From positions 180,023 to 244,022 of IMG/VR virus record IMGVR_UViG_3300043399_000297: a stretch of DNA of 64,000 nucleotides, one strand, 5' to 3'. Under the pieces are notes generated by a model, which was not told where the DNA came from, made no database searches, and worked only from the letters and a program-made list of their open reading frames with translations. Shown here one piece after another: positions 12,927-27,270 of this stretch (positions are counted from its first letter, which is position 1; every line of letters starts with the position of its first letter). The translations under genes and the position numbers were made by a program.

Positions 12927-13451
12927 ATGTCAGTTGAACTTTTTAGGAAATATATTGATATCATCAATGAAAATGCGGATGTTGATATAAATCAAATTGC
13001 AAGCCAACTTGAGTTTTTGCCAACCAAAAAGCAAGCAAAGCAATATAAGTTTGTCAACAACGGCAAGCCAGGACAATTACCTCCTATGACATATACTGTT
13101 TCTGCTATGGAACAGCCGGTTGTTACTATTACTAGCGATGGTAAAGAAACGCAGAATGTAGCAGAAAAGGGCGATATTATTATGAGTGGCCCGAGCAGAG
13201 AAAATTATGTGGTGAAGTCTGCTAAGTTTCCTAAGTTATATCAAGGTGAACTAGGGCAGACAGTTGTTCCAGAACAAAGTCCTAGAATGGTAGCAGTCTA
13301 TACAGCACAGCAGCCTATCACGTTCACTGCACCTTGGGGAGAATCAATGGTACTAAAGCCCGGCGACTATCTTGTTAAGGATGGGGATCAGGGATATTAT
13401 AGAATAGCCAAAGTAGAATACGAACAAACATATAATCCACCAGGAAAATAA
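12927..13451 (+). CDS. PGDYG-like domain protein with putative capsid-targeting N-terminus
   Basis: AEKGDIIM and LKPGDYLV repeats; N-terminus ends IINE. Confidence 0.55.
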   Translation: MSVELFRKYIDIINENADVDINQIASQLEFLPTKKQAKQYKFVNNGKPGQLPPMTYTVSAMEQPVVTITSDGKETQNVAEKGDIIMSGPSRENYVVKSAKFPKLYQGELGQTVVPEQSPRMVAVYTAQQPITFTAPWGESMVLKPGDYLVKDGDQGYYRIAKVEYEQTYNPPGK

Positions 13452-13454
13452 TCT

Positions 13455-14621
13455 ATGAGTCAAATTGTCATTATGCCAGGGGGATTTCACCCCTTTCACG
13501 CAGGACACGCTGCATTATATAATAGCGCCTTAAAAGCCTTCCCTAACGCAGAAGTTTATGTAGCAGCAACTAATGATACTAAGACTCGCCCATTTCCTTT
13601 TGAGATTAAAGAGAAACTAGCTAAAGTTGCGGGTGTAAAGCCTGGGCATTTCATACAAGTAAAGAGTCCGTTTCAAGCTAAAGAAATTACACAGAATTAT
13701 GATCCAGAACGCGACACACTAATTTTTGTTCGTAGCGAAAAAGATAGAACAGAACAACCACAGCCCGGCGGCACAAAGAAAGATGGGTCGCCTGCGTATT
13801 TTCAACCATATACAGGTAAGAATATGCAACCATTCGGCAAACACGCATATATGGCATATCTACCTACAGTAGAGTTTGGTCCTGGAATCAAGAGTGCAAC
13901 TGAGATACGAAATAGTTGGCCTAAATTAGATGATCGTCGTAAACTAGCTATGGTTATGAGTTTATATCCTGCTGCACAAGAAAATCAAAAATTAGCACAG
14001 AATATTATTAAGATGCTTGATTTGGGTATGGGAACAGAACAAATGAATGAATCAATTCTTCAAGAAAAGCCCGGTGATGTTTACTCTAAACGAATGGCTA
14101 ATATTGTTCAAGATTTAGGTAATAATTATTATTTAGGTGATGATAGTTATGATGATGACGAAGGATTCACTAAAGAAAGTTATTCTGTGTGGCATAGAGA
14201 AGGACCTGATGAATACAGGCACGTTGGGTATGTAAATATAAGTCCATATGGACGTTTCCGTAGACCCGGCCAACTAGAAGACGAAATTGAAAAACTAATT
14301 GTTCAAGATCAAAGTCTTGATGAAGAAAAATCTAGTGTAGAAGACTTATACAATGATCCAGAAACACATAGTATTCTTGCTTATGCCAAACAGCATTACC
14401 CAGAGGAACCTGATTTACAGACAGCATTCGTTAAGTTTGTTTTACGTAGTTTAAAGCACAGTGAAGAAGACGATAGAAACCAAGATCAAGAGCTAGAGCG
14501 TCATAGTAAAGATATTAATTTATTGATGAATCGGGTAAAATCGTTACATAATGAGTTGGAAAAAGTTAGTAAAAAATCTAATAAAGTAGATGAAAGTCGA
14601 GATTATTTAGAAGAAAAATAA
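13455..14621 (+). CDS. HIGH-motif nucleotidyltransferase-like protein with modular C-terminus
   Basis: IMPGGFHPFHAGH and ..SATEIR; C-terminal modules separated by MNE/LDE/VDE. Confidence 0.7.
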   Translation: MSQIVIMPGGFHPFHAGHAALYNSALKAFPNAEVYVAATNDTKTRPFPFEIKEKLAKVAGVKPGHFIQVKSPFQAKEITQNYDPERDTLIFVRSEKDRTEQPQPGGTKKDGSPAYFQPYTGKNMQPFGKHAYMAYLPTVEFGPGIKSATEIRNSWPKLDDRRKLAMVMSLYPAAQENQKLAQNIIKMLDLGMGTEQMNESILQEKPGDVYSKRMANIVQDLGNNYYLGDDSYDDDEGFTKESYSVWHREGPDEYRHVGYVNISPYGRFRRPGQLEDEIEKLIVQDQSLDEEKSSVEDLYNDPETHSILAYAKQHYPEEPDLQTAFVKFVLRSLKHSEEDDRNQDQELERHSKDINLLMNRVKSLHNELEKVSKKSNKVDESRDYLEEK

Positions 14622-14673
14622 TTTCACTGCCATAATTCCTCGTAAATATCATTATAATTTAAAAGAGGACCAA

Positions 14674-15573
14674 ATGGCACGTAAACCAACTACTACTAAG
14701 AATACCAAAAAGAACGAACAGAAGATTATTCCCGTAGAAGCCGTTCAGGAAATTGCTGAACAGGCTGCACAAGAGCAGCAGGAAGGCCCCAAGGAAGGTC
14801 AAGTTCAGGTTAACGTAGATTTTCTACGCACTACTAAGGTACATATCGCTATGCCTTGCTATGGCGGTATGCTTACAGAATCAACATTTATGAGTTTTAT
14901 CAAGTGGGCAAATACTGCCCGTCAGCTTGGCATTGACTGGACATTAGAAACTATGGTTAATGAAAGTCTCATTAGCCGCGCACGTAACACACTTACTGCG
15001 AAGTTTCTTGATATGCCCGACGCAACTCACTTATTCTTCGTTGACGCCGATATCGGCTGGGAGCCCTGGCATCTATTGGTCCTCTTGAACAGGGACGTTG
15101 ACGTTATCGGCGGACTATACCCAATGAAGACAATGCCTATCAAGTGGGTTGTTAACGGGTTTGAGGGTGCAGAAGAAGGTCCTGACGGATTGCAGGAAGT
15201 ATCAAAGGCAGGTACTGGTTTCTTATTGATGAAGAAGCACGTATTCGAAAAGCTTAATGTTCACCCGGCAGTCAAGCAGTATAAGAATGATATTGGCCTT
15301 GATCCAAAGTATGACCAATATCTAAAGACATATTTTGATACCGCAGTTCGTCAGAATCGTTATTATAGCGAGGATTGGACATTTTCAGAGAACTTTAGAG
15401 ATTTGGGAGGCAAGATTTATGTTGACAAAAGAGTATTATTGCGTCACAGTGGATCATATGTTTTCTGCTTAGAAAATCAACAGTATTTGCTTGATCAAAT
15501 CGGCCCCATGTGGGCTGAAGCTCAAAAAGCTAAAGGATTCAAGATTATTGATGAAAATGGAAACGAGATTTAA
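14674..15573 (+). CDS. GT-A fold glycosyltransferase-like protein
   Basis: IAMPCYGG, RARN, FFVDAD (DxD), GTGFLL, SEDWTF. Confidence 0.7.
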   Translation: MARKPTTTKNTKKNEQKIIPVEAVQEIAEQAAQEQQEGPKEGQVQVNVDFLRTTKVHIAMPCYGGMLTESTFMSFIKWANTARQLGIDWTLETMVNESLISRARNTLTAKFLDMPDATHLFFVDADIGWEPWHLLVLLNRDVDVIGGLYPMKTMPIKWVVNGFEGAEEGPDGLQEVSKAGTGFLLMKKHVFEKLNVHPAVKQYKNDIGLDPKYDQYLKTYFDTAVRQNRYYSEDWTFSENFRDLGGKIYVDKRVLLRHSGSYVFCLENQQYLLDQIGPMWAEAQKAKGFKIIDENGNEI

Positions 15574-15585
15574 GTTTCTATAACT

Positions 15586-15615
15586 AGAAAGGGTTAACTT
15601 AAGTTAACCCTTTCT
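15586..15615. terminator. Perfect 30-bp palindrome / bidirectional terminator
   Basis: AGAAAGGGTTAACTTAAGTTAACCCTTTCT between convergent genes, followed by a T-run. Confidence 0.65.
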
Positions 15616-16222
15616 TTTTACAATGATCAAAGTGATGTTTTCTCATTCCGCCGGACATCCCTGTTTTGTTACAATGAGGACAAGTTACTATTTCTCTAGC
15701 CGGATTCTTATCACCTAACTTAGATGCTGATAAGTTGGCTCGCGTTTCATCCGTTCGCTTCTGTCCTTTTCCTCCTTTTGATATGAGGGCTTTAGACTCT
15801 TCCGAATGAGTTCTGCCGTAAAAGGGATTGTTATTCCCTTTATTTTTACCCCTCATGAATTCACTATGAAATCGGGCTGCTTCTGCTCTAATATCAGAAT
15901 AGTCATTATTGAATGTTCGTTGTTGTGTTCTACTCTGCGGATTACACATTCTAACCGCCGCGGCTAGCATCTTTCTTTTGGGTTCAATGTTATTAACCAT
16001 ATTAGGTAACAACAAATGAACTTCCAGATGTTCGTTTGCTGTTAGCCACACTAGATTGTCCGCAGTATTTTCTCCTCCCAATGATTTAGGAATAATATGG
16101 TGTCGTTCTACATAGCCTACGATAGCTTTTGCTTGTTTCCTAGATAGATAGCCAGGTGCTCTTGTATTTGCTATATCTACTATACGATAGTATTGTTTTG
16201 TATAATCAGTGTCATTAAACAT
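15599..16222 (-). CDS. HNH homing endonuclease with NUMOD3 repeats
   Basis: ERHHIIPKSLGG..NLVWLT..EH..H; NPFYGRTHSEES; terminal CPHC. Confidence 0.85.
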   Translation of the reverse strand: MFNDTDYTKQYYRIVDIANTRAPGYLSRKQAKAIVGYVERHHIIPKSLGGENTADNLVWLTANEHLEVHLLLPNMVNNIEPKRKMLAAAVRMCNPQSRTQQRTFNNDYSDIRAEAARFHSEFMRGKNKGNNNPFYGRTHSEESKALISKGGKGQKRTDETRANLSASKLGDKNPAREIVTCPHCNKTGMSGGMRKHHFDHCKKKGLT

Positions 16223-16226
16223 AAAT

Positions 16227-16282: not shown

Positions 16283-16337
16283 TAGTATATGTTATTTAGG
16301 TTGGATGATAAATACTCTATAACAATGGGTTTCCAAT

Positions 16338-17723
16338 ATGAAAATTAAAGATATCTATGAAAGTACTACTAGTGGCGCTATCGCTACAGTAGCCTCTCCA
16401 ATGACCACACAATCTCGTAATGCTAGTATCTATGGTGGTAAGAAGGGCGGCAATCTACTTACTGGCACAAAAACTAAAAAGAAGTATGCTAACTCTATTT
16501 CAGAATCGCCAGCTACCGATAAGAGTAACTATTCGGTTGTAAAGGCAGAAGATCACAAGGGAAAGCCGTGTTTCAAAGTAGAATATAAAGGCAAGCCTGC
16601 GTTAAGCACTAGAATCTTTAGAACTAGAGAGGACGCTAATAAGGCGATTGCTAAGATGACAACTGTTAACGAAAGCAAGATGAAAGAGCTTTCTATGGAT
16701 CTTAAAGATATGGACAATGGCAATTTCAAAAAGAAATATGGCAAAAGCAAAGAACAAATGAGATTATCATTAGGTGATCCTGAATCAAAGAAGACGGTTC
16801 ACGAGGCACATCTAGAAGAAGATGATTCCAAGTATAAGCTGGCTAAATTTAATTACAAATCCAATCGGTTTGAACACCACAGTGATCACGACACTGCGGA
16901 TCAGGCCCGCACTGCGGCCCGGTCATTATTAGGCGGAAGACACGGTAATCAAATACGTATCACTGACCCAGCAGGAGAAAAGATTTCATTAAAAAAGAAG
17001 CCAGTAAAGGAAGCACATCTAGAAGAAGACGATTTGATTCTTGTGCCGGGGCAAGGTCATAAATTAAAGACAGGTTTTCATAAGTTTGATCCAGATAAAG
17101 CAGAACATGAGGGCGAAACATTAAAGAATAGTCTTAGAACTATTGCTCGCAATGCTAAAGAACTTCATAGTAGATTAGAAAATCACGATCAATTTCCAGA
17201 ATGGGTAAGTGAAAAGATTGGCACTATTAAGGGTATGATGACTAGTGTTACTGAATATCTCATTAGTCACCAAGAAGGTGATGCCCTAGATGAGCCAACT
17301 GAAATGGCAACTACAGCCGGCGTTATTGCAGGTGGCGGCGTTGGTGAGGCTGCTGACCCAATCGCAAAAAGAATCACTGTCAAAAAATGGGGCGGAAATG
17401 ACATGCATAGCTGGGCTGTTCTAGTCGACGGTAAGCCAGCAGTCACTGGATTGGGTAAGAACGAAGTCAACTATTACAAGAATATGGTAATGAAAAAATT
17501 ACGAGATAAGCCACATTTAACCGGAACTAATATTGAAGAAGCACAGACAATGAGCGGTGCATTAAAGAACACTCTCGCTAAAGCAGAGACTGGTTCTAAG
17601 CTAGATCAAAGTATCAAAAGACATAATGCTAATATCAAAGCCGGGCAATCTGGTACATTAAAGAATGCCCCAACTGGTTATCACTTTGATAGCAAGGGCT
17701 ATTGCAGATTGGGAGATAAGTGA
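16338..17723 (+). CDS. Putative internal head protein (modular, protease-processed)
   Basis: MKIKDIYE N-terminus; many (I/V/L)xE sites; GATAAATA upstream. Confidence 0.55.
   Translation: MKIKDIYESTTSGAIATVASPMTTQSRNASIYGGKKGGNLLTGTKTKKKYANSISESPATDKSNYSVVKAEDHKGKPCFKVEYKGKPALSTRIFRTREDANKAIAKMTTVNESKMKELSMDLKDMDNGNFKKKYGKSKEQMRLSLGDPESKKTVHEAHLEEDDSKYKLAKFNYKSNRFEHHSDHDTADQARTAARSLLGGRHGNQIRITDPAGEKISLKKKPVKEAHLEEDDLILVPGQGHKLKTGFHKFDPDKAEHEGETLKNSLRTIARNAKELHSRLENHDQFPEWVSEKIGTIKGMMTSVTEYLISHQEGDALDEPTEMATTAGVIAGGGVGEAADPIAKRITVKKWGGNDMHSWAVLVDGKPAVTGLGKNEVNYYKNMVMKKLRDKPHLTGTNIEEAQTMSGALKNTLAKAETGSKLDQSIKRHNANIKAGQSGTLKNAPTGYHFDSKGYCRLGDK
16806..17029 (+). repeat. 17-bp direct repeat GCACATCTAGAAGAAGA flanking a 69-codon module
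   Basis: Copies at 16806-16822 and 17013-17029, both encoding AHLEED. Confidence 0.8.
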
Positions 17724-17725
17724 GG

Positions 17726-18373
17726 TCACTTTGACTTACACTTGTCTCCGTGCCATCGCTTAAAGTTTGACGCTCCCTTACCGGAAGTTCCGCAATGTTC
17801 ACACTTCCAAAGTTGCTGGGATGGGTGAGTTCCGTTTTCTAACATTTCGCGGTTTCTTGCTTTATGGTAGCCTGCACCTTGCCAAGGATGAGTGCCGTTC
17901 TTTACGCGGTCACTAGCAACACTTGTTCCATCCGGCCTCTTTAAAAATGGATTAGTGCCATCTTTAACTCTATCACTAGTTCTACTAGTACCGTCGGCAC
18001 GCCTAAGAAAAGGATGAGTGCCGTTCTTAACTCTCTTTAAGTTTCGTTTAGTAGCAGCTTCTTTGTCTAAGAAATGATGGACGCCAGCCGCCAGCCTTTC
18101 GTATGCTGCCTTTCTTGACAATTCCGACTTTTCTTCCGGCGTTATTTGTATATGCCCGCTGATCTTTAAACAAGCGGACCAATCACCCTGTGAATAATGA
18201 ATGTCATAGTGTTCTTTGATAGATACCGCGATTAGATTATTAGGGTCATTATTTGAACGCTTACCGTCGATATGATGAATCTCATACTTTCTTCCGGTTT
18301 CGTCTTTCGGTATTTGACCATAATGATGTTCATATATTCTACGGTACTTGTCTGTACCACAATAAATACACAT
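17726..18373 (-). CDS. HNH endonuclease with GTHPF repeats
   Basis: YEIHHIDGKRSNNDPNNL..EHYDIH; repeated RVKNGTHPF; terminal CEHC..WHGDKCK; paralog of 53054-53653. Confidence 0.85.
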   Translation of the reverse strand: MCIYCGTDKYRRIYEHHYGQIPKDETGRKYEIHHIDGKRSNNDPNNLIAVSIKEHYDIHYSQGDWSACLKISGHIQITPEEKSELSRKAAYERLAAGVHHFLDKEAATKRNLKRVKNGTHPFLRRADGTSRTSDRVKDGTNPFLKRPDGTSVASDRVKNGTHPWQGAGYHKARNREMLENGTHPSQQLWKCEHCGTSGKGASNFKRWHGDKCKSK

Positions 18374-18448: not shown

Positions 18449-18483
18449 CTAAATACATAATAATGACATTTAAGGAGACCGGC

Positions 18484-19806
18484 GTGAGTTCAATAATGAA
18501 AGGGATCGTAGACGAAGGCGAGAGCGTATCCGTTCTTTACATTGACGGGAAACCATCAACAAAGTATTCTAAATCACACGAAGCAGAAGAAGATGCAAAA
18601 CGACTTCGCGTAAAGTTTCCGAACAAGAAGATTGAAATCAAGCAAGAAGTTCGTGAGGTTAAGCAGCGTTTAGACCCTAAGTGCTGGAAAGGTAAGCACA
18701 AAGAAGGCACAAAGATTAAAGGCGGTGTAAGAGTTAATAATTGCGTCCCAAATGAAAGTGTTGAAGAAGCGTCAAGTCCTGCACAACAGGCTGCTATTGC
18801 CATCAATATGAAAAAGCAAGGTAAAAAGCCAAAGAACGAAGATTATACCGGACAATTCACAGCAGAAAGAACAGCAGCAATTAATCCATACGGTGGATTA
18901 AAAGATCGTCAATATAGAGGTGCAATTAATGAAGGTGATGACAATTACGAAATTGGTTCTCAGCTTTTAGACATTGCATATGAAATGAAAGAACTTGCTG
19001 AAAGTGCAATGCGTTTAGTTAGAGGAACACCTGAAGAAGGTAGAGCTAAATCATATTGGTATCCTCATATCTTAATGGCAATCACTGATGATCATGGTTA
19101 TATGGGTAAGAATATGGCTACACTGATGGGGTCTGCTGAAGCACTTATGAGTGGTGATGAAGATGAGATAGGTGAGGCTCGCGACCCTGCAATGGTCAAA
19201 GCAGCAAACAAGAATCTAGTAGACTTAGCATCCGGTGAAGTTCGTCGCAGAGAAATAGCAAGAAGAAAAGCAGAAAAAGCACAAAGGCAAGCGTCAAAAT
19301 ACCTAGCTAGTCTAGATAGACCAAAGAAAAAATCTAAGCAAGATTTACAAATGCTTTGGTCTAAGATTGAGGGCGTAATTTCCAACTCTTTCCCAGACGG
19401 TGATCCATATGATCAATTATGGCCATATATGCAAAAGAATGGATTTACACAAGATGATGTAGAACGAGCATCAAAGATGAATGGCTATAAGGATCTATGG
19501 GACTATTGGGATACGTTAGCTAACGATATTGAAACAGATATGCGGTATGATTGGGAACATAGTGGTCGTCAAGGTCCTGAACCAAAGATACATAGATTTG
19601 GAATGAATGAAACACCAGACACTTCTGGGCCAATTGGCACTCAGCCCGGCGGTTGGCGCAGAACAGATATGGATGAAGATACTTCATTTGGAACTGGTAT
19701 GGGACAAGGTGGCAATGCCGGCCAATCATATCGTAAGTTCAGACCAAAAAGTGCAGGAACTTTCAAAGAAAGTGCAATCTTAAAAGGAATCACTAGTGAG
19801 AGCTAA
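18484..19806 (+). CDS. Putative internal head protein (modular)
   Basis: AAGGAG then GTG at 18484; modules such as CWKGKHKEGTK..NCVP and ASSPAQQAAIAI separated by VxE/INE/IGE/MNE. Confidence 0.55.
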   Translation: MSSIMKGIVDEGESVSVLYIDGKPSTKYSKSHEAEEDAKRLRVKFPNKKIEIKQEVREVKQRLDPKCWKGKHKEGTKIKGGVRVNNCVPNESVEEASSPAQQAAIAINMKKQGKKPKNEDYTGQFTAERTAAINPYGGLKDRQYRGAINEGDDNYEIGSQLLDIAYEMKELAESAMRLVRGTPEEGRAKSYWYPHILMAITDDHGYMGKNMATLMGSAEALMSGDEDEIGEARDPAMVKAANKNLVDLASGEVRRREIARRKAEKAQRQASKYLASLDRPKKKSKQDLQMLWSKIEGVISNSFPDGDPYDQLWPYMQKNGFTQDDVERASKMNGYKDLWDYWDTLANDIETDMRYDWEHSGRQGPEPKIHRFGMNETPDTSGPIGTQPGGWRRTDMDEDTSFGTGMGQGGNAGQSYRKFRPKSAGTFKESAILKGITSES

Positions 19807-22084
19807 AGAGTTCCTACTAGAAAATACTGTTGATGAAGCTAAGATGAATCCATCTAGCTTTGCCAACGCCATTAAAGAAGGCGGGGATAAAGGTGTATTG
19901 GTTGGCTTTGAGTTTGAAGTATGCATACCTAAAAAAACATTAAATATGGTACCTAAAGAAGAAAAAAAATATGATGAAATTATAGCTGAGGCATTCAAAT
20001 CAGAAATTAGCTTATATGATTGGTACTACACATCTAATGGCCCATATTATAGTATATCAATCACGCCTAGAAAATTTGATATATTATTCAAAGTTAAGCC
20101 TGGTATGGGTAAGTTTAACACTTTTAGTGATTTGTTAAGATCAATGTCTAAAGACGAAAAAGAAGAAAATGAAACATATGGCGATTTAATGAAGTTAATG
20201 TTTGATAAACATCCTGAGGCGATTGAAGAAAAGTTTTTTAAGTATTTTGACGTAGAAGATCCAAAGAAAGTATATAAATTCTTAGCAGGAACAGAACAGT
20301 TTAATCTTGATAATCAAGATGAATATGATTACTGGGATAATCATAATCCAAATTATGATAAAGCTGCTACTGTCTTAAAGCCTGCGGTTGAGCAAGCGAT
20401 GAACGCTGAAGTAGAGGTATTTCACGAATACCACGAATCTAGCAAAAACACTACAAGTTGGTACATTGAACCAGATGGCAGCTTAGAACCAAATAGTGGT
20501 GATGCCGCAGCAGAAATCGTAAGCCCGCCACTTCCAGCTGATCAAGCAATGAATGCGTTAAAAAGCTTTTATGCAATGGCTAAGCAACTTAAACTATATA
20601 CGAGCGCAGATAACAGCACAGGTTTGCATATCAATGTAAGTATTCCAGGAACATTAGATGTATTGAAACTTGCTGTGTTCTTAGGGGAACAATATGTATT
20701 AAAATATTTTGGTCGCGAAGATAATGAATATGTAAAAAGCGTAATACAAACTTTGCAAGGTTATACTCCATCACAAGTCTATAAACAAACAGCTAATCGC
20801 AGTAAAAAGAACAAAAAAGTTCAACATCAAATTAATTACAAAGCATTGCAAAAAATAATCAATAAGGAAACTGGTGATCACTTTGCAAGTATTAGCAGTA
20901 ATGGCAAATATATTAGCTTTAGGCACGCCGGCGGAAATTACTTAAGTGACTATAGTAGTATAGTCAACATTGTAGGTAGATTTGTTCAAGCAATGATTAT
21001 TGCAAGCGATCCTGAAATGTATAAGCAAGAATACTTAAAGAAGCTTGTTAAATTATTTGGTGCTCCTGTTACACAACCAACTGGCATTAAAGCTGTTAGA
21101 ACAACTATTGATCAAATAAAGCAAAATGGTATCCCTGTTATACAAATAGCTATGATGTATCCGAAGAAACGCACTGCAACAAATTGGGACAATCTAGAAC
21201 AAAACATAATTTATGGTCATACTCGTTCATATAAGGTAAATCAATATTTTAATGTGGGCGGCGAAGAAATACAGAAAAATAGCCAGCAAGCTAAAAATAT
21301 GATCTTGGAAAAACTCAGAGGTAATGCAAGGCAGGAAGTGTCTAAGTTAGGAGTAGAAAACTTTGCTCTTTCTATCATATATCCTAACTTAGACACATTG
21401 CCACAATTATATCAATTTTTTAAAGAAGGTGGTGAATTAATTTATACTACTTTCGGATCAACAATCACCGGTGACAAATACCCGGCAGCATTAAGTGAAG
21501 ATAGTCTACCCTACAATGATCCTATAGTGCAGCAATATGTCAGGAAATTGATTGCTCAAAGTAAATCTACTGTGGACGAAACAGTAAGCACTGGACAAGG
21601 TGGCGGAAGTGCTGGAAATAATGGTGGTCAAATGGTAGGTGGACCCACTACATATGAACAAGAATATAACAAGTTTAAAAGGAAGGGTCCTCGTCGTATC
21701 ATTGCGATGACTTATGAAGATCAAGGTGCTGAAACTATCACGTTGACTGACTTATATAAACAAGAGAAACCAGACGACAATGAGCAAATCTGGGACTACG
21801 GTACTATGATATGGGATACTCCATTTGAAATTAAAAAGATCACACCTAGAGAACTAGACTTTAATTTAGCGCATCAATATGATGTAGAAGGTATTGAAGA
21901 CTTGTTTGATAGGATGGAACCAGAACAACACGACATTGTTAATGCATACATCAAAGATCCTAATCTTTCAAATTATATTATCGTATTAGATAATGGGCAC
22001 ATTGTAGATGGTAATCATAGAGCTATTGCAGCGGTATTAACTAAAAAACCATTAAGATATATAGATATCGGGGAGGAAGGATAA
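19796..22084 (+). CDS. Putative amidoligase (amidoligase_2-like) fused to a C-terminal ParB/Srx-like domain
   Basis: GFEFEV, EPDGSL, EIVSPP, STGLHINVS, FRHAGG; C-terminal IVDGNHR. Confidence 0.7.
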   Translation: MRAKEFLLENTVDEAKMNPSSFANAIKEGGDKGVLVGFEFEVCIPKKTLNMVPKEEKKYDEIIAEAFKSEISLYDWYYTSNGPYYSISITPRKFDILFKVKPGMGKFNTFSDLLRSMSKDEKEENETYGDLMKLMFDKHPEAIEEKFFKYFDVEDPKKVYKFLAGTEQFNLDNQDEYDYWDNHNPNYDKAATVLKPAVEQAMNAEVEVFHEYHESSKNTTSWYIEPDGSLEPNSGDAAAEIVSPPLPADQAMNALKSFYAMAKQLKLYTSADNSTGLHINVSIPGTLDVLKLAVFLGEQYVLKYFGREDNEYVKSVIQTLQGYTPSQVYKQTANRSKKNKKVQHQINYKALQKIINKETGDHFASISSNGKYISFRHAGGNYLSDYSSIVNIVGRFVQAMIIASDPEMYKQEYLKKLVKLFGAPVTQPTGIKAVRTTIDQIKQNGIPVIQIAMMYPKKRTATNWDNLEQNIIYGHTRSYKVNQYFNVGGEEIQKNSQQAKNMILEKLRGNARQEVSKLGVENFALSIIYPNLDTLPQLYQFFKEGGELIYTTFGSTITGDKYPAALSEDSLPYNDPIVQQYVRKLIAQSKSTVDETVSTGQGGGSAGNNGGQMVGGPTTYEQEYNKFKRKGPRRIIAMTYEDQGAETITLTDLYKQEKPDDNEQIWDYGTMIWDTPFEIKKITPRELDFNLAHQYDVEGIEDLFDRMEPEQHDIVNAYIKDPNLSNYIIVLDNGHIVDGNHRAIAAVLTKKPLRYIDIGEEG

Positions 22085-22203: not shown

Positions 22204-22418
22204 TGAAAGAGGGATTGATAAAAGATATATTAATGGCGATATTTCCTTTATTATTGACAGGAGTAGGTTACCTATTAATGACTGTCATTGACCTGCAGGA
22301 ACAAATACAATTAATACAAGATAATAACCAAATTGCAAGAGACCAACTCAAAGATGATATTGAAGATGAGATTCACGACTTGGACAAAAGAGTTGCTGTT
22401 CTTGAATCAAAACAATAA
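22203..22418 (+). CDS. Small TM + coiled-coil protein
   Basis: N-terminal hydrophobic helix, heptad C-terminus. Confidence 0.65.
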   Translation: MKEGLIKDILMAIFPLLLTGVGYLLMTVIDLQEQIQLIQDNNQIARDQLKDDIEDEIHDLDKRVAVLESKQ

Positions 22419-22439
22419 ATAGTCTATAGGACTTATATT

Positions 22440-22883
22440 ATGTTAGCAGATACACTTAAAACACTATTGGCAACAGCCTATGCCCTATCTATCAAGGCAC
22501 AGAATTTTCACTGGAACGTAGAGGGTCCAGACTTCCCCCAATATCACGAATTCTTTAGTAACTATTACTCAGAAGTATATGACAACACCATTGACAAGAT
22601 AGCTGAAATCATTCGCCAGCTTGATAGTTATACACCTGGCAGTATAACTCGTTATGCTGAACTAAGTCAAATTGAAGACCAAACGAAGATTCCACGAGCC
22701 GAATTAATGATGCAGGAATTATACTATGATAATGATATCATACTCGGGATGTATAAGCAAGCCTTCCACGTAGCAAATGATGCCGACGAACAGGGTATTG
22801 CTAACTTCATTGCAGAACGCATTGACGCCCACAGTAAACACAAGTGGATGTTAAGAAGCATTTTAAAAACAGCGAGGGCCTAA
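22440..22883 (+). CDS. dps: Dps / ferritin-like DNA protection protein
   Basis: HWNVEGPDFPQYHEFF, DKIAE, KHKWML. Confidence 0.9.
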   Translation: MLADTLKTLLATAYALSIKAQNFHWNVEGPDFPQYHEFFSNYYSEVYDNTIDKIAEIIRQLDSYTPGSITRYAELSQIEDQTKIPRAELMMQELYYDNDIILGMYKQAFHVANDADEQGIANFIAERIDAHSKHKWMLRSILKTARA

Positions 22884-22886
22884 CAC

Positions 22887-25562
22887 TTGCGCGCTAAAGA
22901 TTTCTTAATAGTTGAATCATACGAAGACTTATTTGAAGTCAAGATGAGTCCTAGCAACCTCAAAAAATTAGCTAGTGACATTGATGCTAAAGTTGGTATT
23001 GAGTTTGAGATGATCGTGCCTAATGTTGGCACAGTAGATGATGATGCCGATCCAGAAGAAGATATGAGTATGGATGAAGATGCTTATGACATTGACGATA
23101 TCATAAGGTTTTTTGACGATGGCGAATATAATTACGGTAGTGCTATAAATGATTTGCGCAATGAACTTCAAGAAAAGTTCTACGAATATCAAAGCGAACA
23201 AATTGACGATTTATGGAGTCAAGAAAGTGGAGAATATTTTACCAAGTGGTGTCGTGAAAATGTAAGCGATGACGAAGTTGCTGATTATGTAGGAACAGAA
23301 GAAGATTTATTAGGCGACCGAGTTCCTTCAAAGGAAGACTGGGAAAAATTCATTGAGGATGAATGGGAAGAACAAGGTTATAACTACAGTAAAGCATATG
23401 AAGAATTTCGTGATGAAAAACAAGAAGAAGGCGACTTTGATGAAAGACAATTTTTAAATAGTATCGGCATTTATAATATGTCGGATGTTCCCGGTGCCAC
23501 TAGTGGATATATTATGTGGCCATACTATACCGGCGGCGATAGTGAAATGAATCTTGAACAGGTAGCTAGCGAATTTTCACGAGCAGTAGGAATGCATGCC
23601 AATTATAGCACAAGTTATCACGGCGGTAATAGAGAAGATGATGCATACGATATTGAACCTGACTCAAGTTTACACGGTGAAGGTGGTGATACCGGTTTAG
23701 AGTTTATTAGTCCTCCGTTGTCATTAGACCAAGCAGTTGAACAAGTTAAGTTAGTTAAGAAATGGGCCGACGGAAGAGGTGCCTATACTAATCGCTCTAC
23801 CGGATTACATATGAATGTTAGTGTTCCTGATTTTGATCAAGACAAATTAGACTTTGTTAAGCTTACATTGTTATTAGGTGACAAATATCTATTAGATAGA
23901 TTTGGTCGCAGTGCAAATACATATTGTAAAAGTGCGATGGATGTTATTGCAGATGCTAGTCCGCAAGATAAAGAACTTTTATTTAAAAAATTAAAAAATA
24001 ATTTAGAAGAAATGGCAAGTAAAGTTATTCACTCGGGAAGAGTAGGTAAGTTCACTAGTATCAATCCAAAAGATAATCGTGTTGAATTCAGAGGCCCGGG
24101 CGGAGATTGGCTTGGTGATAATTTTGATAAGGTAGAAGATACACTATATCGCTGTGTTGTAGCACTTGATGCAGCAGTTGATCCTGACAAATATCGTAAG
24201 GAATACCTAAAGAAATTAACTAAGATGTTTGCTCCTACTAAAGGATCAATTGAGGATATATTTGTTCAGTATGCTGCCGGCACTATCACTAGAAGTGAAC
24301 TTAAGAATAAACTTAAGACTGCACAAGCAGAAAGAAAACAATCAAAATATACTGCACAGGGTATCATTGAAGTTCCAATCTATCAGGCAAGAGACGGTGA
24401 CTGGATTGTTGAATATGATAACCCAACCGGCGATAATCGCAGAATCATTCTCAAGCGAACAGAGCAAGTCAGTAATGATGATAAAGCATTACAAGCCGCA
24501 GTTAAGCTAGAGCCTAGCTGGTTCAAGCCAGACGATATAGAAAACATCTTAGTAACTGAGTTTACCGGCAATCACTACTATATTGTTCACGGTGACGACC
24601 CGGATAAGAGAGTTGAAATCTACGCCTTCAGCCCAATGCAAGCAGTTGAAATCGCGGTTGATATGTATCCTAATATGGTTAATCAAGGCGAACTTACTGC
24701 TAGATTGAAGGATGAGTTTGAGGAACCACAGCAATCATCTCCTAGAATGGCACCAGGTGAGCAATTATATATTGTTCGCAACAATGACACAGGACATGAG
24801 GTTAGATTAGCTGCTGGCAGTGAACAAAATGCTAGAGGGCGTGCAATTAGAAACGATCCACATAATTTTACTAGTGGCGCTGATATCACTGTTACTCCTG
24901 TAAGCTTGCAAACTGGCGCAGAACCTTCTAGTGACCTGGGTCAGGAATATCAGTTATACCGTGTGACTGGACAAACTCAACCTTACGTAACAGCTAGTGA
25001 ATATATTGCAGCTAGATCGGTTTCAGAAGCTAATCGCATTGCAATGACATTGTATCCTAACTTGTATAGAGTTCAAGAACCTGATATTGTATTGCAGGAT
25101 TCTGACAGAAGCACAGTCTCTATGTATCAAGCTAGACAAGCACAACAGATAGAACGAATGAATGAACCAAGTCAATCTTCTGATTGGAGAGATAGGTTGC
25201 GCGGTCATTTAGGTCAGGCTCAGCCAGCATTTGGCGGTAGTGACGAAGATAATACATTCGGAAGCTGGGTAGTATCTAATAGTAGAACTGGCGAAACTAT
25301 AAATGTTATGGCTAATAATGAGCAACACGCAAGAGATAGAGCCGAATCACATAGACCTATGTGGAGCCAGCAAGATTTAGAAGTTAGGCGACAACATCAG
25401 CCTTCTAGCAGCAGTGGTATGAATGTATATACCATCACCACTACGAGTGGCAGGCAGATTAATCTTTTAGGTTATGATCGTGATCACGCTGCTACCAGGG
25501 CCATAGAAATGGAGCCCGGACTATCTGGAAACATCGTGGATGTGAATTTGGCAACAGATTGA
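22887..25562 (+). CDS. Putative amidoligase with C-terminal tandem domain repeats
   Basis: GIEFEM, EPDSSL, EFISPP, STGLHMNVS, VEFRGPGG; paralog of 19796; about six ~45-aa repeats after 24400. Confidence 0.7.
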   Translation: MRAKDFLIVESYEDLFEVKMSPSNLKKLASDIDAKVGIEFEMIVPNVGTVDDDADPEEDMSMDEDAYDIDDIIRFFDDGEYNYGSAINDLRNELQEKFYEYQSEQIDDLWSQESGEYFTKWCRENVSDDEVADYVGTEEDLLGDRVPSKEDWEKFIEDEWEEQGYNYSKAYEEFRDEKQEEGDFDERQFLNSIGIYNMSDVPGATSGYIMWPYYTGGDSEMNLEQVASEFSRAVGMHANYSTSYHGGNREDDAYDIEPDSSLHGEGGDTGLEFISPPLSLDQAVEQVKLVKKWADGRGAYTNRSTGLHMNVSVPDFDQDKLDFVKLTLLLGDKYLLDRFGRSANTYCKSAMDVIADASPQDKELLFKKLKNNLEEMASKVIHSGRVGKFTSINPKDNRVEFRGPGGDWLGDNFDKVEDTLYRCVVALDAAVDPDKYRKEYLKKLTKMFAPTKGSIEDIFVQYAAGTITRSELKNKLKTAQAERKQSKYTAQGIIEVPIYQARDGDWIVEYDNPTGDNRRIILKRTEQVSNDDKALQAAVKLEPSWFKPDDIENILVTEFTGNHYYIVHGDDPDKRVEIYAFSPMQAVEIAVDMYPNMVNQGELTARLKDEFEEPQQSSPRMAPGEQLYIVRNNDTGHEVRLAAGSEQNARGRAIRNDPHNFTSGADITVTPVSLQTGAEPSSDLGQEYQLYRVTGQTQPYVTASEYIAARSVSEANRIAMTLYPNLYRVQEPDIVLQDSDRSTVSMYQARQAQQIERMNEPSQSSDWRDRLRGHLGQAQPAFGGSDEDNTFGSWVVSNSRTGETINVMANNEQHARDRAESHRPMWSQQDLEVRRQHQPSSSSGMNVYTITTTSGRQINLLGYDRDHAATRAIEMEPGLSGNIVDVNLATD

Positions 25563-25637
25563 TAAAATAGGTTGACAATGCTAGCTAACTATGCTAAAAC
25601 AGTGATTCACTGATAAATACACAAAAGGTGATATAAT

Positions 25638-25952
25638 ATGAAAATTAATGAAATCTTGTTTGAATCGTTTGAAGATGACAACATTGAAGATCCGGATACT
25701 GAAAAGGTTCCCAACCTTGTCGTTCAGATTCGCAAGAGTATGGATACTGGCGGCAATCGCCCTATCGCCTTTCGTGATGGTTCCAGAGTTGAGCTTCCTG
25801 TAAATGCAATGATTGCATTCTTGAATCGCTATGAAACGCTCAAGCCCATGGACCGTGAAGAAATGCAGAACCTTGCTATTCAGAGTAAGGAAGCATTCAT
25901 TGATACCGTGAAGAATTATAACAAGCCACGTGCTCCGAAAAGCATTTATTGA
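25638..25952 (+). CDS. Hypothetical protein with putative capsid-targeting N-terminus
   Basis: MKINEILFES; GATAAATA upstream. Confidence 0.7.
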   Translation: MKINEILFESFEDDNIEDPDTEKVPNLVVQIRKSMDTGGNRPIAFRDGSRVELPVNAMIAFLNRYETLKPMDREEMQNLAIQSKEAFIDTVKNYNKPRAPKSIY

Positions 25953-25967
25953 GTTTACCCAATAAAT

Positions 25968-25996
25968 TTGACATACACCTACACACCTGTTAAATA
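25968..25996 (+). promoter_or_regulatory. Sigma70-type promoter for the porin gene
   Basis: TTGACA-N17-TAAATA followed by a GCAA-tetraloop hairpin in the 5' UTR. Confidence 0.55.
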
Positions 25997-26051
25997 TATA
26001 ACTGACTATGCAAATAGTCGGACTTTAACTATGAAAAAGGAAAGTTAATTT

Positions 26052-26618
26052 ATGAAGAAGCTAATTGCAATCGCAGCACTCGCCTCGGCAGTCGTTGCAA
26101 CTCCTGCTCTTGCAGCAGGAACACTCACTGGCGAAGTTCGTCTTGGCGATGTTCGCGGTGGCGCACACACTGACTCTACCGAACTTAAGGTTGAATACTG
26201 GGGTAATGTATACGGCAATGTAGTTGCTGGTGCAGAGCTACAGGCTAAGCAGGCGCAGAATGCTGGTGCAGTTGATGCTAAGTTTTCTGGTAAGATTGGA
26301 TACAATCTCCCAGAAGTAGCTGGTATTAAGACCACTGCTTATGCCGAGCTTGGTGAATCTTTCAAGCAGGGCAATACCAGTGAATTCTGGGGTCTTGGAA
26401 TCAAGGGTTCGCGTCAGGTATATGGTCCGGTTTCAGTAACTGCTGGTTATCGCCATCGTCAGGGATTTGAATATCTCGACAATATTAACGAGGAGCGAGT
26501 TCACGCTGGTCTCACCTACGCAATCAGTGATAGAACTGGGGTAGGCGCTACTTATTATCGCACTCGCGGAACTACCGATAGCGATACTGTTGGTATTTCC
26601 ATCAGCCAGAAGTTTTAA
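26052..26618 (+). CDS. Outer-membrane beta-barrel (porin-like) protein
   Basis: Sec signal MKKLIAIAALASAVVATPALA; alternating beta strands; C-terminal Phe (ISISQKF). Confidence 0.75.
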   Translation: MKKLIAIAALASAVVATPALAAGTLTGEVRLGDVRGGAHTDSTELKVEYWGNVYGNVVAGAELQAKQAQNAGAVDAKFSGKIGYNLPEVAGIKTTAYAELGESFKQGNTSEFWGLGIKGSRQVYGPVSVTAGYRHRQGFEYLDNINEERVHAGLTYAISDRTGVGATYYRTRGTTDSDTVGISISQKF

Positions 26619-26631
26619 TTAATTTATAAAA

Positions 26632-26663
26632 GAAATGGCGGCGAAGTAATTCGTCGCCATTTC
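26632..26663 (+). terminator. Intrinsic terminator
   Basis: GAAATGGCGGCGAA-GTAA-TTCGTCGCCATTTC. Confidence 0.7.
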
Positions 26664-26685
26664 CATATCCAATGATAAATATAAT

Positions 26686-27270
26686 ATGCTCGGTGATGAA
26701 ATCTTAGTAGAATCTGCTGCCTCGGAATTAGCCAAAAAACTACCTAGTTTGGCTAAGCACGATTATGATACCATTGATAAACTTATGCGTAAAGTTGCAC
26801 AAAAGCATCATATTACTGGTAAGGCATTACACGACTTGTTTGTTAAAAAATACAAAAGAACTCCTGATACCTGGATTAAAAACAAGTTAGATGAAGTAGA
26901 TGTTGACATTGAAAATCTAGACATTCCTGACGAAGTGAATAAGTTTGCTGAATGGGCAATGCGTAGGGTTCATCTTAAGAATCCAATAAAAATTGAACTG
27001 AGTATGGACACAGAAGATGCTCAGCAAAATCATCATACTGGTAGGCACACTGAAGGTTCAGATACTATATGGGTTTATGCAAAGAACCGAAATTTAGTCG
27101 ATATCTTAAGAACAGTATTCCACGAAATTGTTCATTGTCGCCAAAGTGAACTGGGTATGATTCAGCCCGGCGATAGTTATCCCGGCAGTCCCATTGAAGC
27201 GATGGCTGATATGTTAGCTGGCAAGTATATCAAAATCTATGGCGAGAAGAACCATCACATATTTCAGTAA
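26686..27270 (+). CDS. Zincin-like metallopeptidase domain protein
   Basis: LRTVFHEIVHCRQ (HExxH) with downstream PIEAMAD; N-terminus ends ILVE. Confidence 0.65.
   Translation: MLGDEILVESAASELAKKLPSLAKHDYDTIDKLMRKVAQKHHITGKALHDLFVKKYKRTPDTWIKNKLDEVDVDIENLDIPDEVNKFAEWAMRRVHLKNPIKIELSMDTEDAQQNHHTGRHTEGSDTIWVYAKNRNLVDILRTVFHEIVHCRQSELGMIQPGDSYPGSPIEAMADMLAGKYIKIYGEKNHHIFQ

What the first reader, a model, noticed from the sequence alone, without database searches (positions are those of the whole stretch)
12927..27270. Late region of putative capsid-packaged polyprotein cargo with shared targeting leaders and (I/L/V/M)xE cut sites
Seen: unrelated proteins share short N-termini ending in hydrophobic-x-E (MSVELFRKYIDIINE, MKIKDIYE, MRAKEFLLE, MRAKDFLIVE, MKINEILFE, MLGDEILVE). 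Several are strings of small modules separated by VNE/VHE/LEE/VGE/IEE/INE/MNE/VDE. Established: T4 internal proteins carry a ~10-aa capsid-targeting sequence ending IAE, cleaved by the prohead protease at (I/L)xE. Inference: amidoligases, a nucleotidyltransferase, a metallopeptidase, a ParB-like domain and many peptides are loaded into the head, released by processing and injected, forming an unexplored effector or anti-defence payload.
Basis: partly seen in the sequence, partly recalled or inferred. Interest (0 to 1): 0.62.

Follow-up and report, generated by a model that had tools for sequence, protein, structure and literature searches.

The report
Capsid-address leaders on phage cargo proteins
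An uncultured giant T4-related phage puts short N-terminal tags resembling phage T4's capsid-targeting sequence on many unrelated proteins and joins small protein modules by protease-type cut sites, which suggests a large, sequence-readable set of proteins packed into the head and injected with the DNA.

Summary
All six N-termini are at the stated coordinates, and comparison with 83 related viral contigs shows real, protein-level signals.

- **Leaders:** there are three classes. A is M[RK]AxEF[LIV]xE, B is MSSI[MLI]KG[IL]xxE, C is MSxELFRKYIDxxNE. Each sits on non-homologous cargo.
- **Class A:** it closely resembles the tested T4 capsid-targeting sequence MKTYQEFIAE and heads 59 cargo families.
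- **Junctions:** 18 of those families recur inside larger proteins. In 72 of 87 junctions the residue-exact boundary follows hydrophobic-x-E, against 2.1% background.
- **Machinery:** the genome has a gp21-type prohead protease, a gp55-type late sigma factor and T4-like late-promoter motifs before these genes.
- **Experimental anchor:** the one cultured homologue of the two amidoligases, Atu_ph07 gp196, was found in purified virions.

- Raw hydrophobic-x-E density is at background, and 31% of all proteins have one near the N-terminus.
- The nucleotidyltransferase, glycosyltransferase-like, Dps-like and outer-membrane-like ORFs carry no leader.
- The two amidoligases are paralogues.

Packaging, cleavage and ejection are inferred, not shown. 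I rate it a new variant of the T4 internal-protein system, interest about 0.7.

The parts
12334..12342 (+). Late-promoter-like motif GATAAATAC ahead of the operon 12366-15573
   Evidence: The motif is 16-fold enriched upstream of genes and precedes the portal, baseplate wedge and virion protein genes; a gp55-like sigma factor is encoded.
12927..13451 (+). Cargo ORF with class-C leader (aa 1-15, nt 12927-12971, MSVELFRKYIDIINE|N) and a PGDYG domain
   Evidence: Pfam PGDYG, E 2.7e-5. The same leader heads an unrelated 146-147-aa cargo in L045, L050 and L062. It resembles the N-terminus of the genome's own gp67-like core protein, MDIRKYEQLINLVINE.
13455..14621 (+). Cytidylyltransferase-like nucleotidyltransferase, NO leader; C-terminal extension begins after QMNE199|S (nt 14043-14051)
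   Evidence: Pfam CTP_transf_like. 13 HSPs with relatives end at residue about 199. Orthologues in L014 and L016 are 230-269 aa.
14674..15573 (+). phrog_1574 protein, function unknown, no leader
   Evidence: conserved full-length in relatives.
16307..16315 (+). Late-promoter-like motif GATAAATAC, 22 nt before ATG 16338
16338..17723 (+). Multi-module cargo ORF with class-A leader (aa 1-8, nt 16338-16361, MKIKDIYE|S) followed by an MCP-N-terminus-like STTSGAIATVASPM segment
   Evidence: Orthologues keep MKI[KST]D[IF]..E|STT[SA]G. Modules 198-310 and 342-391 hit separate proteins of cyanophages and of Rhodobacter/Stenotrophomonas phages. HSP ends cluster after ISE56 and LDE319.
18484..19806 (+). 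Multi-module cargo ORF with class-B leader (aa 1-11, nt 18484-18516, MSSIMKGIVDE|G); true start is GTG behind AAGGAG
   Evidence: Sequence. The same leader occurs at N-termini and, flanked by xxE on both sides, inside polyproteins of relatives. HSP ends fall after VEE and INE.
19796..22084 (+). Cargo polyprotein: class-A leader (nt 19796-19822, MRAKEFLLE|N), Amidoligase_2 (about nt 20387-20680), junction VDE595|T (nt 21572-21580), Gly-rich module, ParB/Srx-like domain (nt 21713-22081)
   Evidence: Pfam. The module after VDE595 is a stand-alone ORF with its own leader in relatives, MRANEFIFE|TVSTG in L012 and MRASEFLPE|SVSTG in L018. DGNHRAxAA is invariant. ParB-N/Srx are the top fold hits at weak E.
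22414..22883 (+). Late-promoter-like motif (22414-22422) and Dps/ferritin-like gene 22440-22883, no leader; conserved anchor of the locus
   Evidence: Pfam Ferritin, 4e-21; 165 relatives in IMG/VR.
22887..25562 (+). Cargo ORF: class-A leader (nt 22887-22916, MRAKDFLIVE|S), Amidoligase_2 (about nt 23547-24107), long C-terminal part of about 6 small repeats seen by eye only
   Evidence: Paralogue of ORF19796. Homologue of virion protein Atu_ph07 gp196. BLAST does not confirm the repeats.
25612..25952 (+). Late-promoter-like motif (25612-25620) and a 104-aa acidic cargo ORF, 25638-25952, with class-A leader (nt 25638-25664, MKINEILFE|S)
   Evidence: orthologues with the leader in at least 10 distinct sequences.
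26674..27270 (+). Late-promoter-like motif (26674-26682) abutting the start; cargo ORF 26686-27270 with degenerate class-A leader (nt 26686-26712, MLGDEILVE|S), helical N-domain, junction LDE70|V (nt 26887-26895), zincin domain with HEIVH (nt 27121-27135)
   Evidence: Orthologues carry MRANEFITE|S, MRAIEFLSE|S and MKANDFVNE|T. H146, E147, H150 and E171 are invariant. The linker at residues 67-77 has low pLDDT. Top fold hits are selecase, Wss1 and abylysin, prob 0.9-0.99.
15599..16222 (-). HNH/NUMOD3 homing endonuclease, inserted element, not cargo
   Evidence: Pfam; paralogues elsewhere in the genome.
17726..18373 (-). HNH_3 homing endonuclease, inserted element, not cargo
   Evidence: Pfam; paralogues.
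26052..26618 (+). ORF with a signal-peptide-like N-terminus, beta-barrel-like by eye; no leader, not part of the cargo set
   Evidence: Translation; no Pfam hit; no relatives in genome contigs.

Best explanation
The region is a late-expressed, fast-evolving cargo locus of an uncultured jumbo phage with a T4-type head.

Proposed mechanism:
1. Cargo proteins carry a 8-15-residue N-terminal leader of one of three classes. All classes end in hydrophobic-x-Glu.
2. The leader works like the T4 capsid-targeting sequence. It docks the protein onto the scaffolding core while the prohead forms.
3. The gp21-type prohead protease then cuts after the Glu. It also cuts the accessible hydrophobic-x-Glu junctions between modules of the longer proteins. 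This releases enzymes (amidoligases, a ParB/Srx-like domain, a small zincin) and many mini-proteins inside the head.
4. These products leave with the DNA at infection.

Shown here: the leaders, their protein-level conservation on non-homologous cargo, the junction motif, the protease and late-sigma genes, the late-promoter motifs, and the likeness to T4's tested sequence.

Shown by others: T4 CTS function, and virion presence of the amidoligase homologue in Atu_ph07.

Inferred: targeting, cleavage, ejection and any host-takeover or anti-defence role in this phage.
For: 1. Leader specificity. There are 7 hits in six frames of the 244-kb genome, all at gene starts and 6 in the finding.
2. Spread in relatives. 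75 of 83 related loci carry 1-8 class-A leaders, with 189 of 191 hits on the gene strand. Five related genomes (three estimated 95-100% complete) hold 3-6 strict copies each and none of the reversed pattern.
3. Protein-level selection. The consensus is M-R/K-A-x-E/D-F-L/I/V-x-E, with free synonymous variation (GCA/GCC/GCT/GCG, GAA/GAG, TTT/TTC, AGA/CGA).
4. Modularity. 59 N-terminal cargo families carry class A. Pfam finds zeta-toxin/AAA_33 kinase, GH19 and Hydrolase_2 wall hydrolases, a deaminase, GNAT, ASCH and LRV/HEAT repeats among them. Class C heads two unrelated cargos. Class B occurs both at N-termini and internally between xxE sites.
5. Likeness to T4. IPII and IPIII start MKTYQEFIAE|A and IPI starts MKTFKEF...ITE|A. 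One DNA pattern, M-[KR]-x(2-3)-EF-phi-x-E, hit only ipII, ipIII and gene 61.1 in T4; the clade's leaders fit the same motif but were scanned with other patterns. The review PMC9026906 says targeting depends mainly on residues 4 and 7 of the IPIII sequence and processing on 8 and 10; the F, the hydrophobic residue and the E conserved here line up with IPIII F7, I8 and E10.
6. Junction test. 77 of 87 junctions have E at P1 and 72 of 87 have phi-x-E, against 6.6% and 2.1% background. 17 of 18 module families show it. P2 prefers D/N/E at junctions but T at leaders, so junctions are not leader relics.
7. Machinery. The gp21 homologue has the His and Ser motifs aligned (32% identity, E 1e-21). The MCP aligns to T4 gp23 from LLAE|STAG. 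Scaffold and gp67-like core proteins have phi-x-E-rich N-termini.
8. Late-promoter motif (G/A)ATAAATA lies before ORFs 12366, 16338, 22440, 25638 and 26686, as before the portal and baseplate genes.
9. Atu_ph07 gp196, homologous to both window amidoligases (E 8e-30 and 3e-25), was detected in purified virions with 14 unique peptides and 30% coverage, and lies two genes from the portal (PMC6102473 Table S5).
Against: - There is no virion proteome or N-terminal sequencing for this phage or any close relative. The best cultured DNA polymerase match is 47% identical.
- Raw phi-x-E density is at background.
- The strict class-A pattern is absent from the nearest cultured jumbo phages Phosso, Atu_ph07, XaC1 and PBECO4. 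The likeness to T4 could therefore be convergence.
- The Atu_ph07 data show virion association but say nothing about head location or cleavage.
- Several genes in the same late operons lack any leader.
- The late-promoter call rests on a motif and a sigma-factor homologue, not on transcripts.
- Several cargos in relatives are 750-990 aa, larger than the T4 internal proteins.
Confidence: 0.66

Rival explanations
1. The proteins are ordinary late cytoplasmic multidomain proteins. The N-terminal motif is a favoured translation-start or first-helix sequence. The phi-x-E junctions are just the usual ends of acidic interdomain linkers. Nothing is packaged or cut.
For: Raw phi-x-E density is at background and 31% of proteins have one near the N-terminus. 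The codons after ATG are A-rich (AGA GCA AAA GAA). There is no direct virion evidence for this phage.
Against: - F6, the hydrophobic residue 7 and E9 are conserved through synonymous change.
- The junction is residue-exact in 72 of 87 cases across 17 module families.
- Class-B leaders recur internally bracketed by xxE.
- The match to the tested T4 sequence is close.
- The Atu_ph07 homologue is in virions.
Confidence: 0.12
2. The cargo is packaged, but the cuts are made by the leader-tagged zincin (the ORF26686 family), possibly after ejection. This would follow the self-processing proposed for polyvalent proteins, rather than cutting by the gp21-type prohead protease.
For: The zincin has invariant HExxH plus E and is present in most related loci, as a separate ORF or inside polyproteins. 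Iyer et al. 2017 (PMC5512222) describe multidomain 'polyvalent' proteins of phages and plasmids, and Iyer et al. 2021 (PMC7824862) describe them as injected with the DNA.
Against: - Cleavage after Glu with a hydrophobic P3 is the hallmark of the T4 prohead protease; giant-phage (phiKZ-group) proteases also cleave after Glu (PMC9026906).
- P1' at the junctions is A/K/S/N/T/G, not hydrophobic as thermolysin-like zincins prefer. That preference is from my own knowledge.
- The closest folds, Wss1/SprT and selecase, are not known polyprotein processors.
Confidence: 0.1
3. The leader is a recognition tag for the adjacent DnaJ and ClpA-like chaperone pair. That pair unfolds or holds the tagged proteins, either for loading or for timed removal.
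For: DnaJ (8586-9401) and the ClpA-like ATPase (9414-11681) lie directly upstream and are syntenic in L014 and L016. Iyer et al. 2021 suggested that phage ClpA may translocate unfolded proteins or aid virion assembly (PMC7824862).
Against: No ClpP was found in the contig, which is 71% complete. This idea does not explain the internal phi-x-E junctions or the T4 likeness. It is compatible with the main model as an accessory step rather than a replacement.
Confidence: 0.07
4. The shared starts are nucleotide-level recombination or regulatory cassettes (promoter, ribosome site and first codons) that shuffle genes. They carry no meaning in the protein.
For: The locus is hyperplastic, with homing endonucleases between the genes and heavy module shuffling.
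Against: Upstream sequences differ widely between copies. Third codon positions vary freely while the residues stay. Internal junctions have no start context.
Confidence: 0.03

Closest known systems
Phage T4 internal proteins IPI, IPII, IPIII and Alt with their capsid-targeting sequence (CTS), processed by the gp21 prohead protease
   Same: - A short N-terminal propeptide ends in hydrophobic-x-Glu.
- The core E-F-(I/L)-x-E is shared (T4 MKTYQEFIAE against MRAxEF[LIV]xE).
- The same leader sits on unrelated cargo.
- A gp21-family protease is present, late-type promoters precede the genes, and the loci are hypervariable.
   Different: - There are three leader classes, not one.
- The class-A leader is one residue shorter than T4's.
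- Cargo is far more diverse (59 N-terminal families) and includes proteins of 750-990 aa.
- Long strings of shuffled mini-modules are joined by cut-site-like junctions, with internal copies of a leader.
- The phage is a 350-kb-class uncultured jumbo phage only distantly related to T4.
- None of it has been tested experimentally.
Ejection / inner-body proteins of phiKZ-like giant phages (201phi2-1, SPN3US), cleaved at several sites by a gp21-like protease
   Same: Many head-internal proteins are cut after Glu at several sites, and the fragments stay in the head and enter the cell (PMC9026906, PMC7411985).
   Different: The review says cleavage is after Glu with very few other determinants. From my own knowledge the motif is S/A/G-x-E, and no common N-terminal address tag is known. 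Those phages form a different lineage with virion RNA polymerases. Here P3 is L, V or I.
Polyvalent proteins of phages and conjugative elements (Iyer et al. 2017, PMC5512222)
   Same: Several conflict-type domains lie in one polypeptide. Here these are amidoligase with a ParB-like domain, and in relatives a deaminase with GH19, a zincin and a GNAT. The domains shuffle extensively and are proposed to be delivered with the DNA.
   Different: No linkage to a portal gene or a MuF-type domain was seen here (that association of polyvalent proteins is from my own knowledge). Delivery here is predicted through N-terminal leaders plus prohead-protease sites. Many modules are 30-60-residue mini-proteins without enzyme folds.
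Atu_ph07 gp196 (AUZ94978.1), a virion-associated Amidoligase_2 protein next to the portal gene
   Same: It is homologous to both window amidoligases, including the stretch before the first GxEFE strand. Its N-terminus, MRWQDISSKKLTE, also ends in phi-x-E.
   Different: It is 500 aa, with no ParB-like or repeat extension. Its leader does not match class A. It lies in the head-gene cluster, not in a cargo locus.

Membership tests
T4-type CTS / internal-protein system | A gp21-family (Peptidase_S77) prohead protease is encoded by the same phage | tested here: met
   PF03420 hit, 98 bits, above cut-off. 32% identity to T4 gp21 with the His (GEVDHP) and Ser (GVSSRG) motifs aligned.
T4-type CTS / internal-protein system | A 7-19-residue N-terminal propeptide ending in (L/I/V)-x-E | tested here: met
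   Leaders of 8-15 residues on seven window ORFs all end in phi-x-E.
T4-type CTS / internal-protein system | The same leader on non-homologous mature proteins | tested here: met
   59 N-terminal cargo families for class A, two for class C, several for class B.
T4-type CTS / internal-protein system | Sequence likeness to the tested T4 CTS (key residues F7, I8, E10 of MKTYQEFIAE) | tested here: met
   The consensus M-R/K-A-x-E-F-(L/I/V)-x-E keeps F, the hydrophobic residue and E in register, one residue shorter. The DNA pattern for this motif hit T4 ipII and ipIII; the clade's leaders fit it in sequence but were scanned with other patterns.
T4-type CTS / internal-protein system | Expression with the head genes (late) | tested here: inconclusive
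   (G/A)ATAAATA motifs precede the genes and a gp55-like sigma factor is encoded. No transcript data were examined.
T4-type CTS / internal-protein system | Physical presence in the head, removal of the leader, ejection into the host | not testable with these tools
   Only indirect support: the Atu_ph07 gp196 homologue is in virions (PMC6102473 Table S5). The protease-substrate co-fold gave no verdict.
Polyvalent proteins (Iyer et al. 2017) | Two or more conflict-related domains in one polypeptide | tested here: met
   ORF19796 has Amidoligase_2 plus a ParB/Srx-like domain. L092 has a deaminase plus GH19.
Polyvalent proteins (Iyer et al. 2017) | Association with head-morphogenesis genes or MuF-type packaging domains (a defining feature taken from my own knowledge; the paper was not read here) | tested here: not met
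   The locus lies between the DnaJ/ClpA-like genes and the DNA polymerase, about 175 kb from the portal on this contig. No MuF-type domain appeared in the Pfam scans.
Amidoligase_2 (PF12224) | Profile match above the curated cut-off | tested here: met
   29.2 and 34.8 bits against a cut-off of 22.
ParB/Srx fold | DGxHR motif and ParB-N-like fold | tested here: inconclusive
   DGNHRAxAA is invariant in 10 homologues. ParB-N, Srx, Noc and KorB are the top Foldseek hits, but E is 0.3 or worse and TM about 0.3. There is no Pfam hit.
Zincin metallopeptidase (minigluzincin / SprT-like) | HExxH plus a downstream Glu on a zincin fold | tested here: met
   H146, E147, H150 and E171 are invariant in 24 sequences. 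Selecase, Wss1 and abylysin are the top hits, prob 0.9-0.99. Foldseek E-values are weak (0.2 or worse) and no Pfam family matches.

The most novel reading that the evidence does not exclude
A whole clade of uncultured aquatic jumbo phages uses a readable grammar for its injected proteome. The grammar has three interchangeable address leaders plus hydrophobic-x-Glu cut sites, and it lets the phages assemble, shuffle and load dozens of enzymes and mini-proteins as cleavable polyproteins. Some modules copy the mature N-terminus of the capsid protein. If so, the injected proteome of these phages can be listed from sequence alone, and the T4 leader would be an ancient, portable signal rather than a T-even peculiarity.
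Probability: 0.45. Interest if true: 0.8.

Novelty: new variant of a known kind. Interest (0 to 1): 0.7.

Why it matters
Proteins that phages inject with their DNA act first in an infection, for example in anti-restriction, host takeover and wall penetration. They are hard to recognise from sequence.

If these leaders and junctions work as in T4, they mark such proteins directly in metagenomic genomes. That would give a catalogue of candidate early effectors in phages that cannot be grown. The catalogue would include amidoligases, ParB-like, zincin, GNAT, deaminase, zeta-type kinase and wall hydrolases, plus many unknown mini-proteins.

It would also widen the T4 'expression-packaging-processing' tool with new leaders, and it would show how polyprotein cargo evolves by module shuffling.

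Tried and rejected
- **Megablast of the region against phage records:** no match.
- **Raw phi-x-E enrichment:** none, so I dropped it as evidence.
- **Pfam on sub-fragments of the multi-module ORFs:** nothing significant.
- **PDB sequence search for the ParB-like and zincin parts:** nothing.
- **BLAST self-comparison of the ORF22887 C-terminal half:** no repeats detected. The roughly six repeats are seen by eye only.
- **Co-fold of the gp21-like protease with ORF25638:** no verdict, score 0.00. This is evidence neither for nor against.
- **tblastn of ORF25638 against cultured phages:** no match.
- **RsoM2USA proteomics:** only ten abundant bands were identified, so it is uninformative for its amidoligase homologue, ORF26.
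- **'Moraphage' paper (PMC12619734):** from its abstract, a different lineage (predicted Bacteroidota hosts, lacking much of the machinery of other large phages); not this clade.
- **Host clue from the signal-peptide ORF:** no relatives in genome contigs.
- **Single-linkage clustering of whole cargo proteins:** it collapses 87 proteins into one cluster because of shared modules. I replaced it by clustering the first 70 residues.
- **Not used:** the large protein searches and the read-mapping tools, because the claims do not rest on them.

Full report
**What the window is.** The window is the last 64 kb of a 244,022-bp IMG/VR viral contig estimated 71% complete.
- It is a jumbo phage with a T4-type core. 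Its DNA polymerase is at best 47% identical to Sinorhizobium phage Phosso and 42-45% identical to Atu_ph07, XaC1 and PBECO4.
- The head module, at genome 2-8 kb on the minus strand, encodes a gp23-like capsid protein, a gp22-like scaffold, a gp21-like protease, an acidic gp67-like core protein and the portal.
- A gp55-like late sigma factor is present.
- The octamer (G/A)ATAAATA is up to 16-fold enriched upstream of genes. It precedes the portal, baseplate wedge and several virion-protein genes.
- Within the finding it precedes ORFs 12366, 16338, 22440, 25638 and 26686. A copy at 18361 lies 115 nt before the corrected start 18484.
- 'Late region' is therefore a reasonable reading, although it rests on a motif and not on transcripts. 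The locus lies between DnaJ and ClpA-like genes and the DNA polymerase, not in the head cluster.

**The observation.** All six quoted N-termini are there.
- A strict pattern for M[KR]x[KN][ED][FI]..E, tried at every possible start in six frames of the whole genome, hits only ORFs 16338, 19796, 22887 and 25638.
31% of all proteins have hydrophobic-x-E in their first 16 residues. The density of that tripeptide in the finding's proteins equals the genome mean.
- ORF19796 and ORF22887 are paralogues.

**Relatives.** Using the Dps-like gene in the middle of the locus as an anchor, I fetched 80 related loci. Searches with two of the cargo proteins added four usable ones.
- These belong to a large uncultured clade with complete genomes of 350-360 kb.
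- Scanning all starts gave 191 class-A leaders, 189 of them on the gene strand, in 75 of 83 loci, with up to 8 per locus.
- The consensus is M-R(72%)/K-A(64%)-x-E(86%)/D-F(80%)-L/I/V-x-E. Synonymous codons vary freely, so selection acts on the peptide.
- The leader heads 59 families of cargo N-termini.
- Pfam finds a zeta-toxin/AAA_33 kinase, GH19 and Hydrolase_2 wall hydrolases, a cytidine/dCMP deaminase, a GNAT, ASCH, LRV/HEAT repeats and DUF6934 among them.
- ORF26686's odd MLGDEILVE is a decayed copy. Its orthologues start MRANEFITE|S, MRAIEFLSE|S or MKANDFVNE|T.

**Two more leader classes.**
- The ORF listed from 18379 really starts at GTG 18484, behind AAGGAG, and reads MSSIMKGIVDE|G.
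- This class-B leader heads different proteins in relatives. It also occurs inside polyproteins bracketed by xxE on both sides, for example NE|SSILEGIEQVDE|NLHKWF.
- ORF12927's MSVELFRKYIDIINE (class C) is shared with an unrelated 146-147-aa cargo in three relatives, where the similarity stops about 10 residues after the leader.
- Class C also resembles the N-terminus of the phage's own gp67-like core protein, MDIRKYEQLINLVINE.

**Comparison with T4.**
- From the T4 record, IPII and IPIII start MKTYQEFIAE|A and IPI starts MKTFKEFTSTTTPVSTITE|A.
- The review PMC9026906 reports that the first ten residues of IPIII suffice for packaging. Targeting depends mainly on residues 4 and 7, and processing on residues 8 and 10.
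- Class A keeps the F, the hydrophobic residue and the E in the same register, one residue shorter.
- The DNA pattern for M-[KR]-x(2-3)-EF-phi-x-E finds ipII, ipIII and gene 61.1 in T4. It finds nothing in Phosso, Atu_ph07, XaC1 or PBECO4.

**Cut sites between modules.** I took the first 70 residues after each leader and searched them against all ORFs of the related loci.
- Where such a module lies inside a larger protein and the alignment starts at its first residue, the residue before it is Glu in 77 of 87 distinct contexts.
- The triplet is [ILVMFY]-x-E in 72 of 87, against 6.6% and 2.1% at other positions of the same proteins.
- 17 of 18 module families show this.
- P3 is L, V or I, and P2 is mostly D, N or E. 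Leaders prefer T at P2, so junctions are not fossil leaders.
- The clearest case in the window is ORF19796. There ...STVDE595|TVSTGQGGGSAG... continues with a module that is a separate ORF with its own leader in L012 (MRANEFIFE|TVSTG) and L018.
- Further window junctions with support from alignment ends are MNE199|S in ORF13455, ISE56|S and LDE319|P in ORF16338, and VEE|A and INE|G in ORF18484.
- LDE70|V in ORF26686 also qualifies, and the predicted structure has a low-confidence linker there.
- Separate modules of ORF16338 hit separate proteins of cyanophages and of Rhodobacter and Stenotrophomonas phages.
- A cyanophage protein next to a small terminase gene is a string of the same Cys-rich mini-modules.

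- Both amidoligases pass Pfam's cut-off.
- The C-terminus of ORF19796 has an invariant DGNHRAxAA. ParB-N and sulfiredoxin are its best fold matches, at weak scores.
- ORF26686 has invariant HExxH plus Glu, and minigluzincins and Wss1 are its best matches.
- The nucleotidyltransferase is real but has no leader. The same holds for ORF14674, the Dps-like ferritin and the signal-peptide ORF.

**Experimental anchor.** Only two cultured phages in the collection, Atu_ph07 and RsoM2USA, have a homologue of the amidoligases.
- The Atu_ph07 protein AUZ94978.1 weighs 57.93 kDa by calculation and lies two genes before the portal. That identifies it as gp196.
- Table S5 of PMC6102473 lists gp196 (57.94 kDa) among proteins of purified virions, with 14 unique peptides and 30.2% coverage.
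- It aligns to both window proteins at E 8e-30 and 3e-25.
- This shows virion association of the family, not head location or cleavage.

**Mechanism and rivals.** The best reading is a T4-type internal-protein system expanded into three leaders and cleavable polyproteins (confidence about 0.66).

The rivals are:
- no packaging at all (0.12);
- cutting by the tagged zincin instead of the prohead protease (0.10);
- a tag for the neighbouring DnaJ/ClpA-like chaperones, with no ClpP found (0.07);
- a DNA-level cassette (0.03).

A co-fold of the protease with ORF25638 gave no verdict.

**Novelty.** The principle is known from T4, and CTS-like leaders in T-even relatives have been noted. I found no description of the following in the papers searched:
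- the spread of the signal to a distant uncultured jumbo clade;
- three leader classes;
- the junction grammar;
- the module shuffling;
- the enzyme repertoire.

I rate it a new variant of a known kind.

Noticed in passing
window 8586-11681: A DnaJ gene (DnaJ plus DnaJ_C) and a 755-aa ClpA-like AAA+ gene lie directly upstream of the cargo locus. A late-promoter-like motif sits at 9389, and the pair is syntenic in relatives L014 and L016. No ClpP was found in the contig. They may help load or refold cargo.
   Followed up: partly
window 26052-26618: A 188-aa ORF with a signal-peptide-like N-terminus, beta-barrel-like by eye, sits inside the cargo locus. It has no Pfam or PHROG match and no relatives in the species-genome collection.
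   Followed up: partly
window 15599-16222, 17726-18373, 27271-27888 (minus strand): Three homing-endonuclease genes (HNH/NUMOD3, HNH_3, NUMOD3 with a GIY-YIG-like N-terminus by eye) are wedged between cargo genes. Each has TATAAATA upstream on its own strand and paralogues elsewhere in the genome.
   Followed up: partly
window 16362-16420; L071:9847, L076:9829, L078:3617: The segment right after the ORF16338 leader, E|STTSGAIATVASPM...R, copies the predicted mature N-terminus of the capsid protein, LLAE|STAGTTTAGNIATL...RR. The same module appears in 54-60-aa leader-bearing ORFs of relatives. It could be a capsid-arm mimic or a protease-docking motif.
   Followed up: no
window 26674-26688 and orthologues (L043:14401, L048:11507, L096:15312): In the zincin family the late-promoter motif ends only 3-9 nt before the start codon. 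This suggests leaderless or near-leaderless mRNAs.
   Followed up: no
L105 (T4 NC_000866 18966-19130): T4 gene 61.1, a 54-aa hypothetical protein next to the primase gene, starts MKTFKEFIKE. That is a CTS-like N-terminus outside the known ip genes.
   Followed up: no
own genome 34949-55207 (outside the window): An ORF of 6,752 aa lies directly behind a GATAAATA motif, next to the baseplate wedge gene.
   Followed up: no
L006:13927-14304 (own genome 106927-107304): This is the only class-A leader gene of the genome outside the finding. It reads MRASEFINE|SYDAAK..., is 126 aa, and has no Pfam match.
   Followed up: partly
L099:859-3033 (Synechococcus phage S-SCSM2R_117): A 724-aa cyanophage protein next to the small terminase gene is a string of the same Cys-rich mini-modules (CWKGY...NCV, WFK...C...C, SAYASGALVKCRK) found in this clade's polyproteins. 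It does not have the class-A leader.
   Followed up: no
window 22203-22418: A 71-aa ORF with one hydrophobic helix and a coiled-coil tail lies just before the Dps-like gene. Its function is unknown.
   Followed up: no
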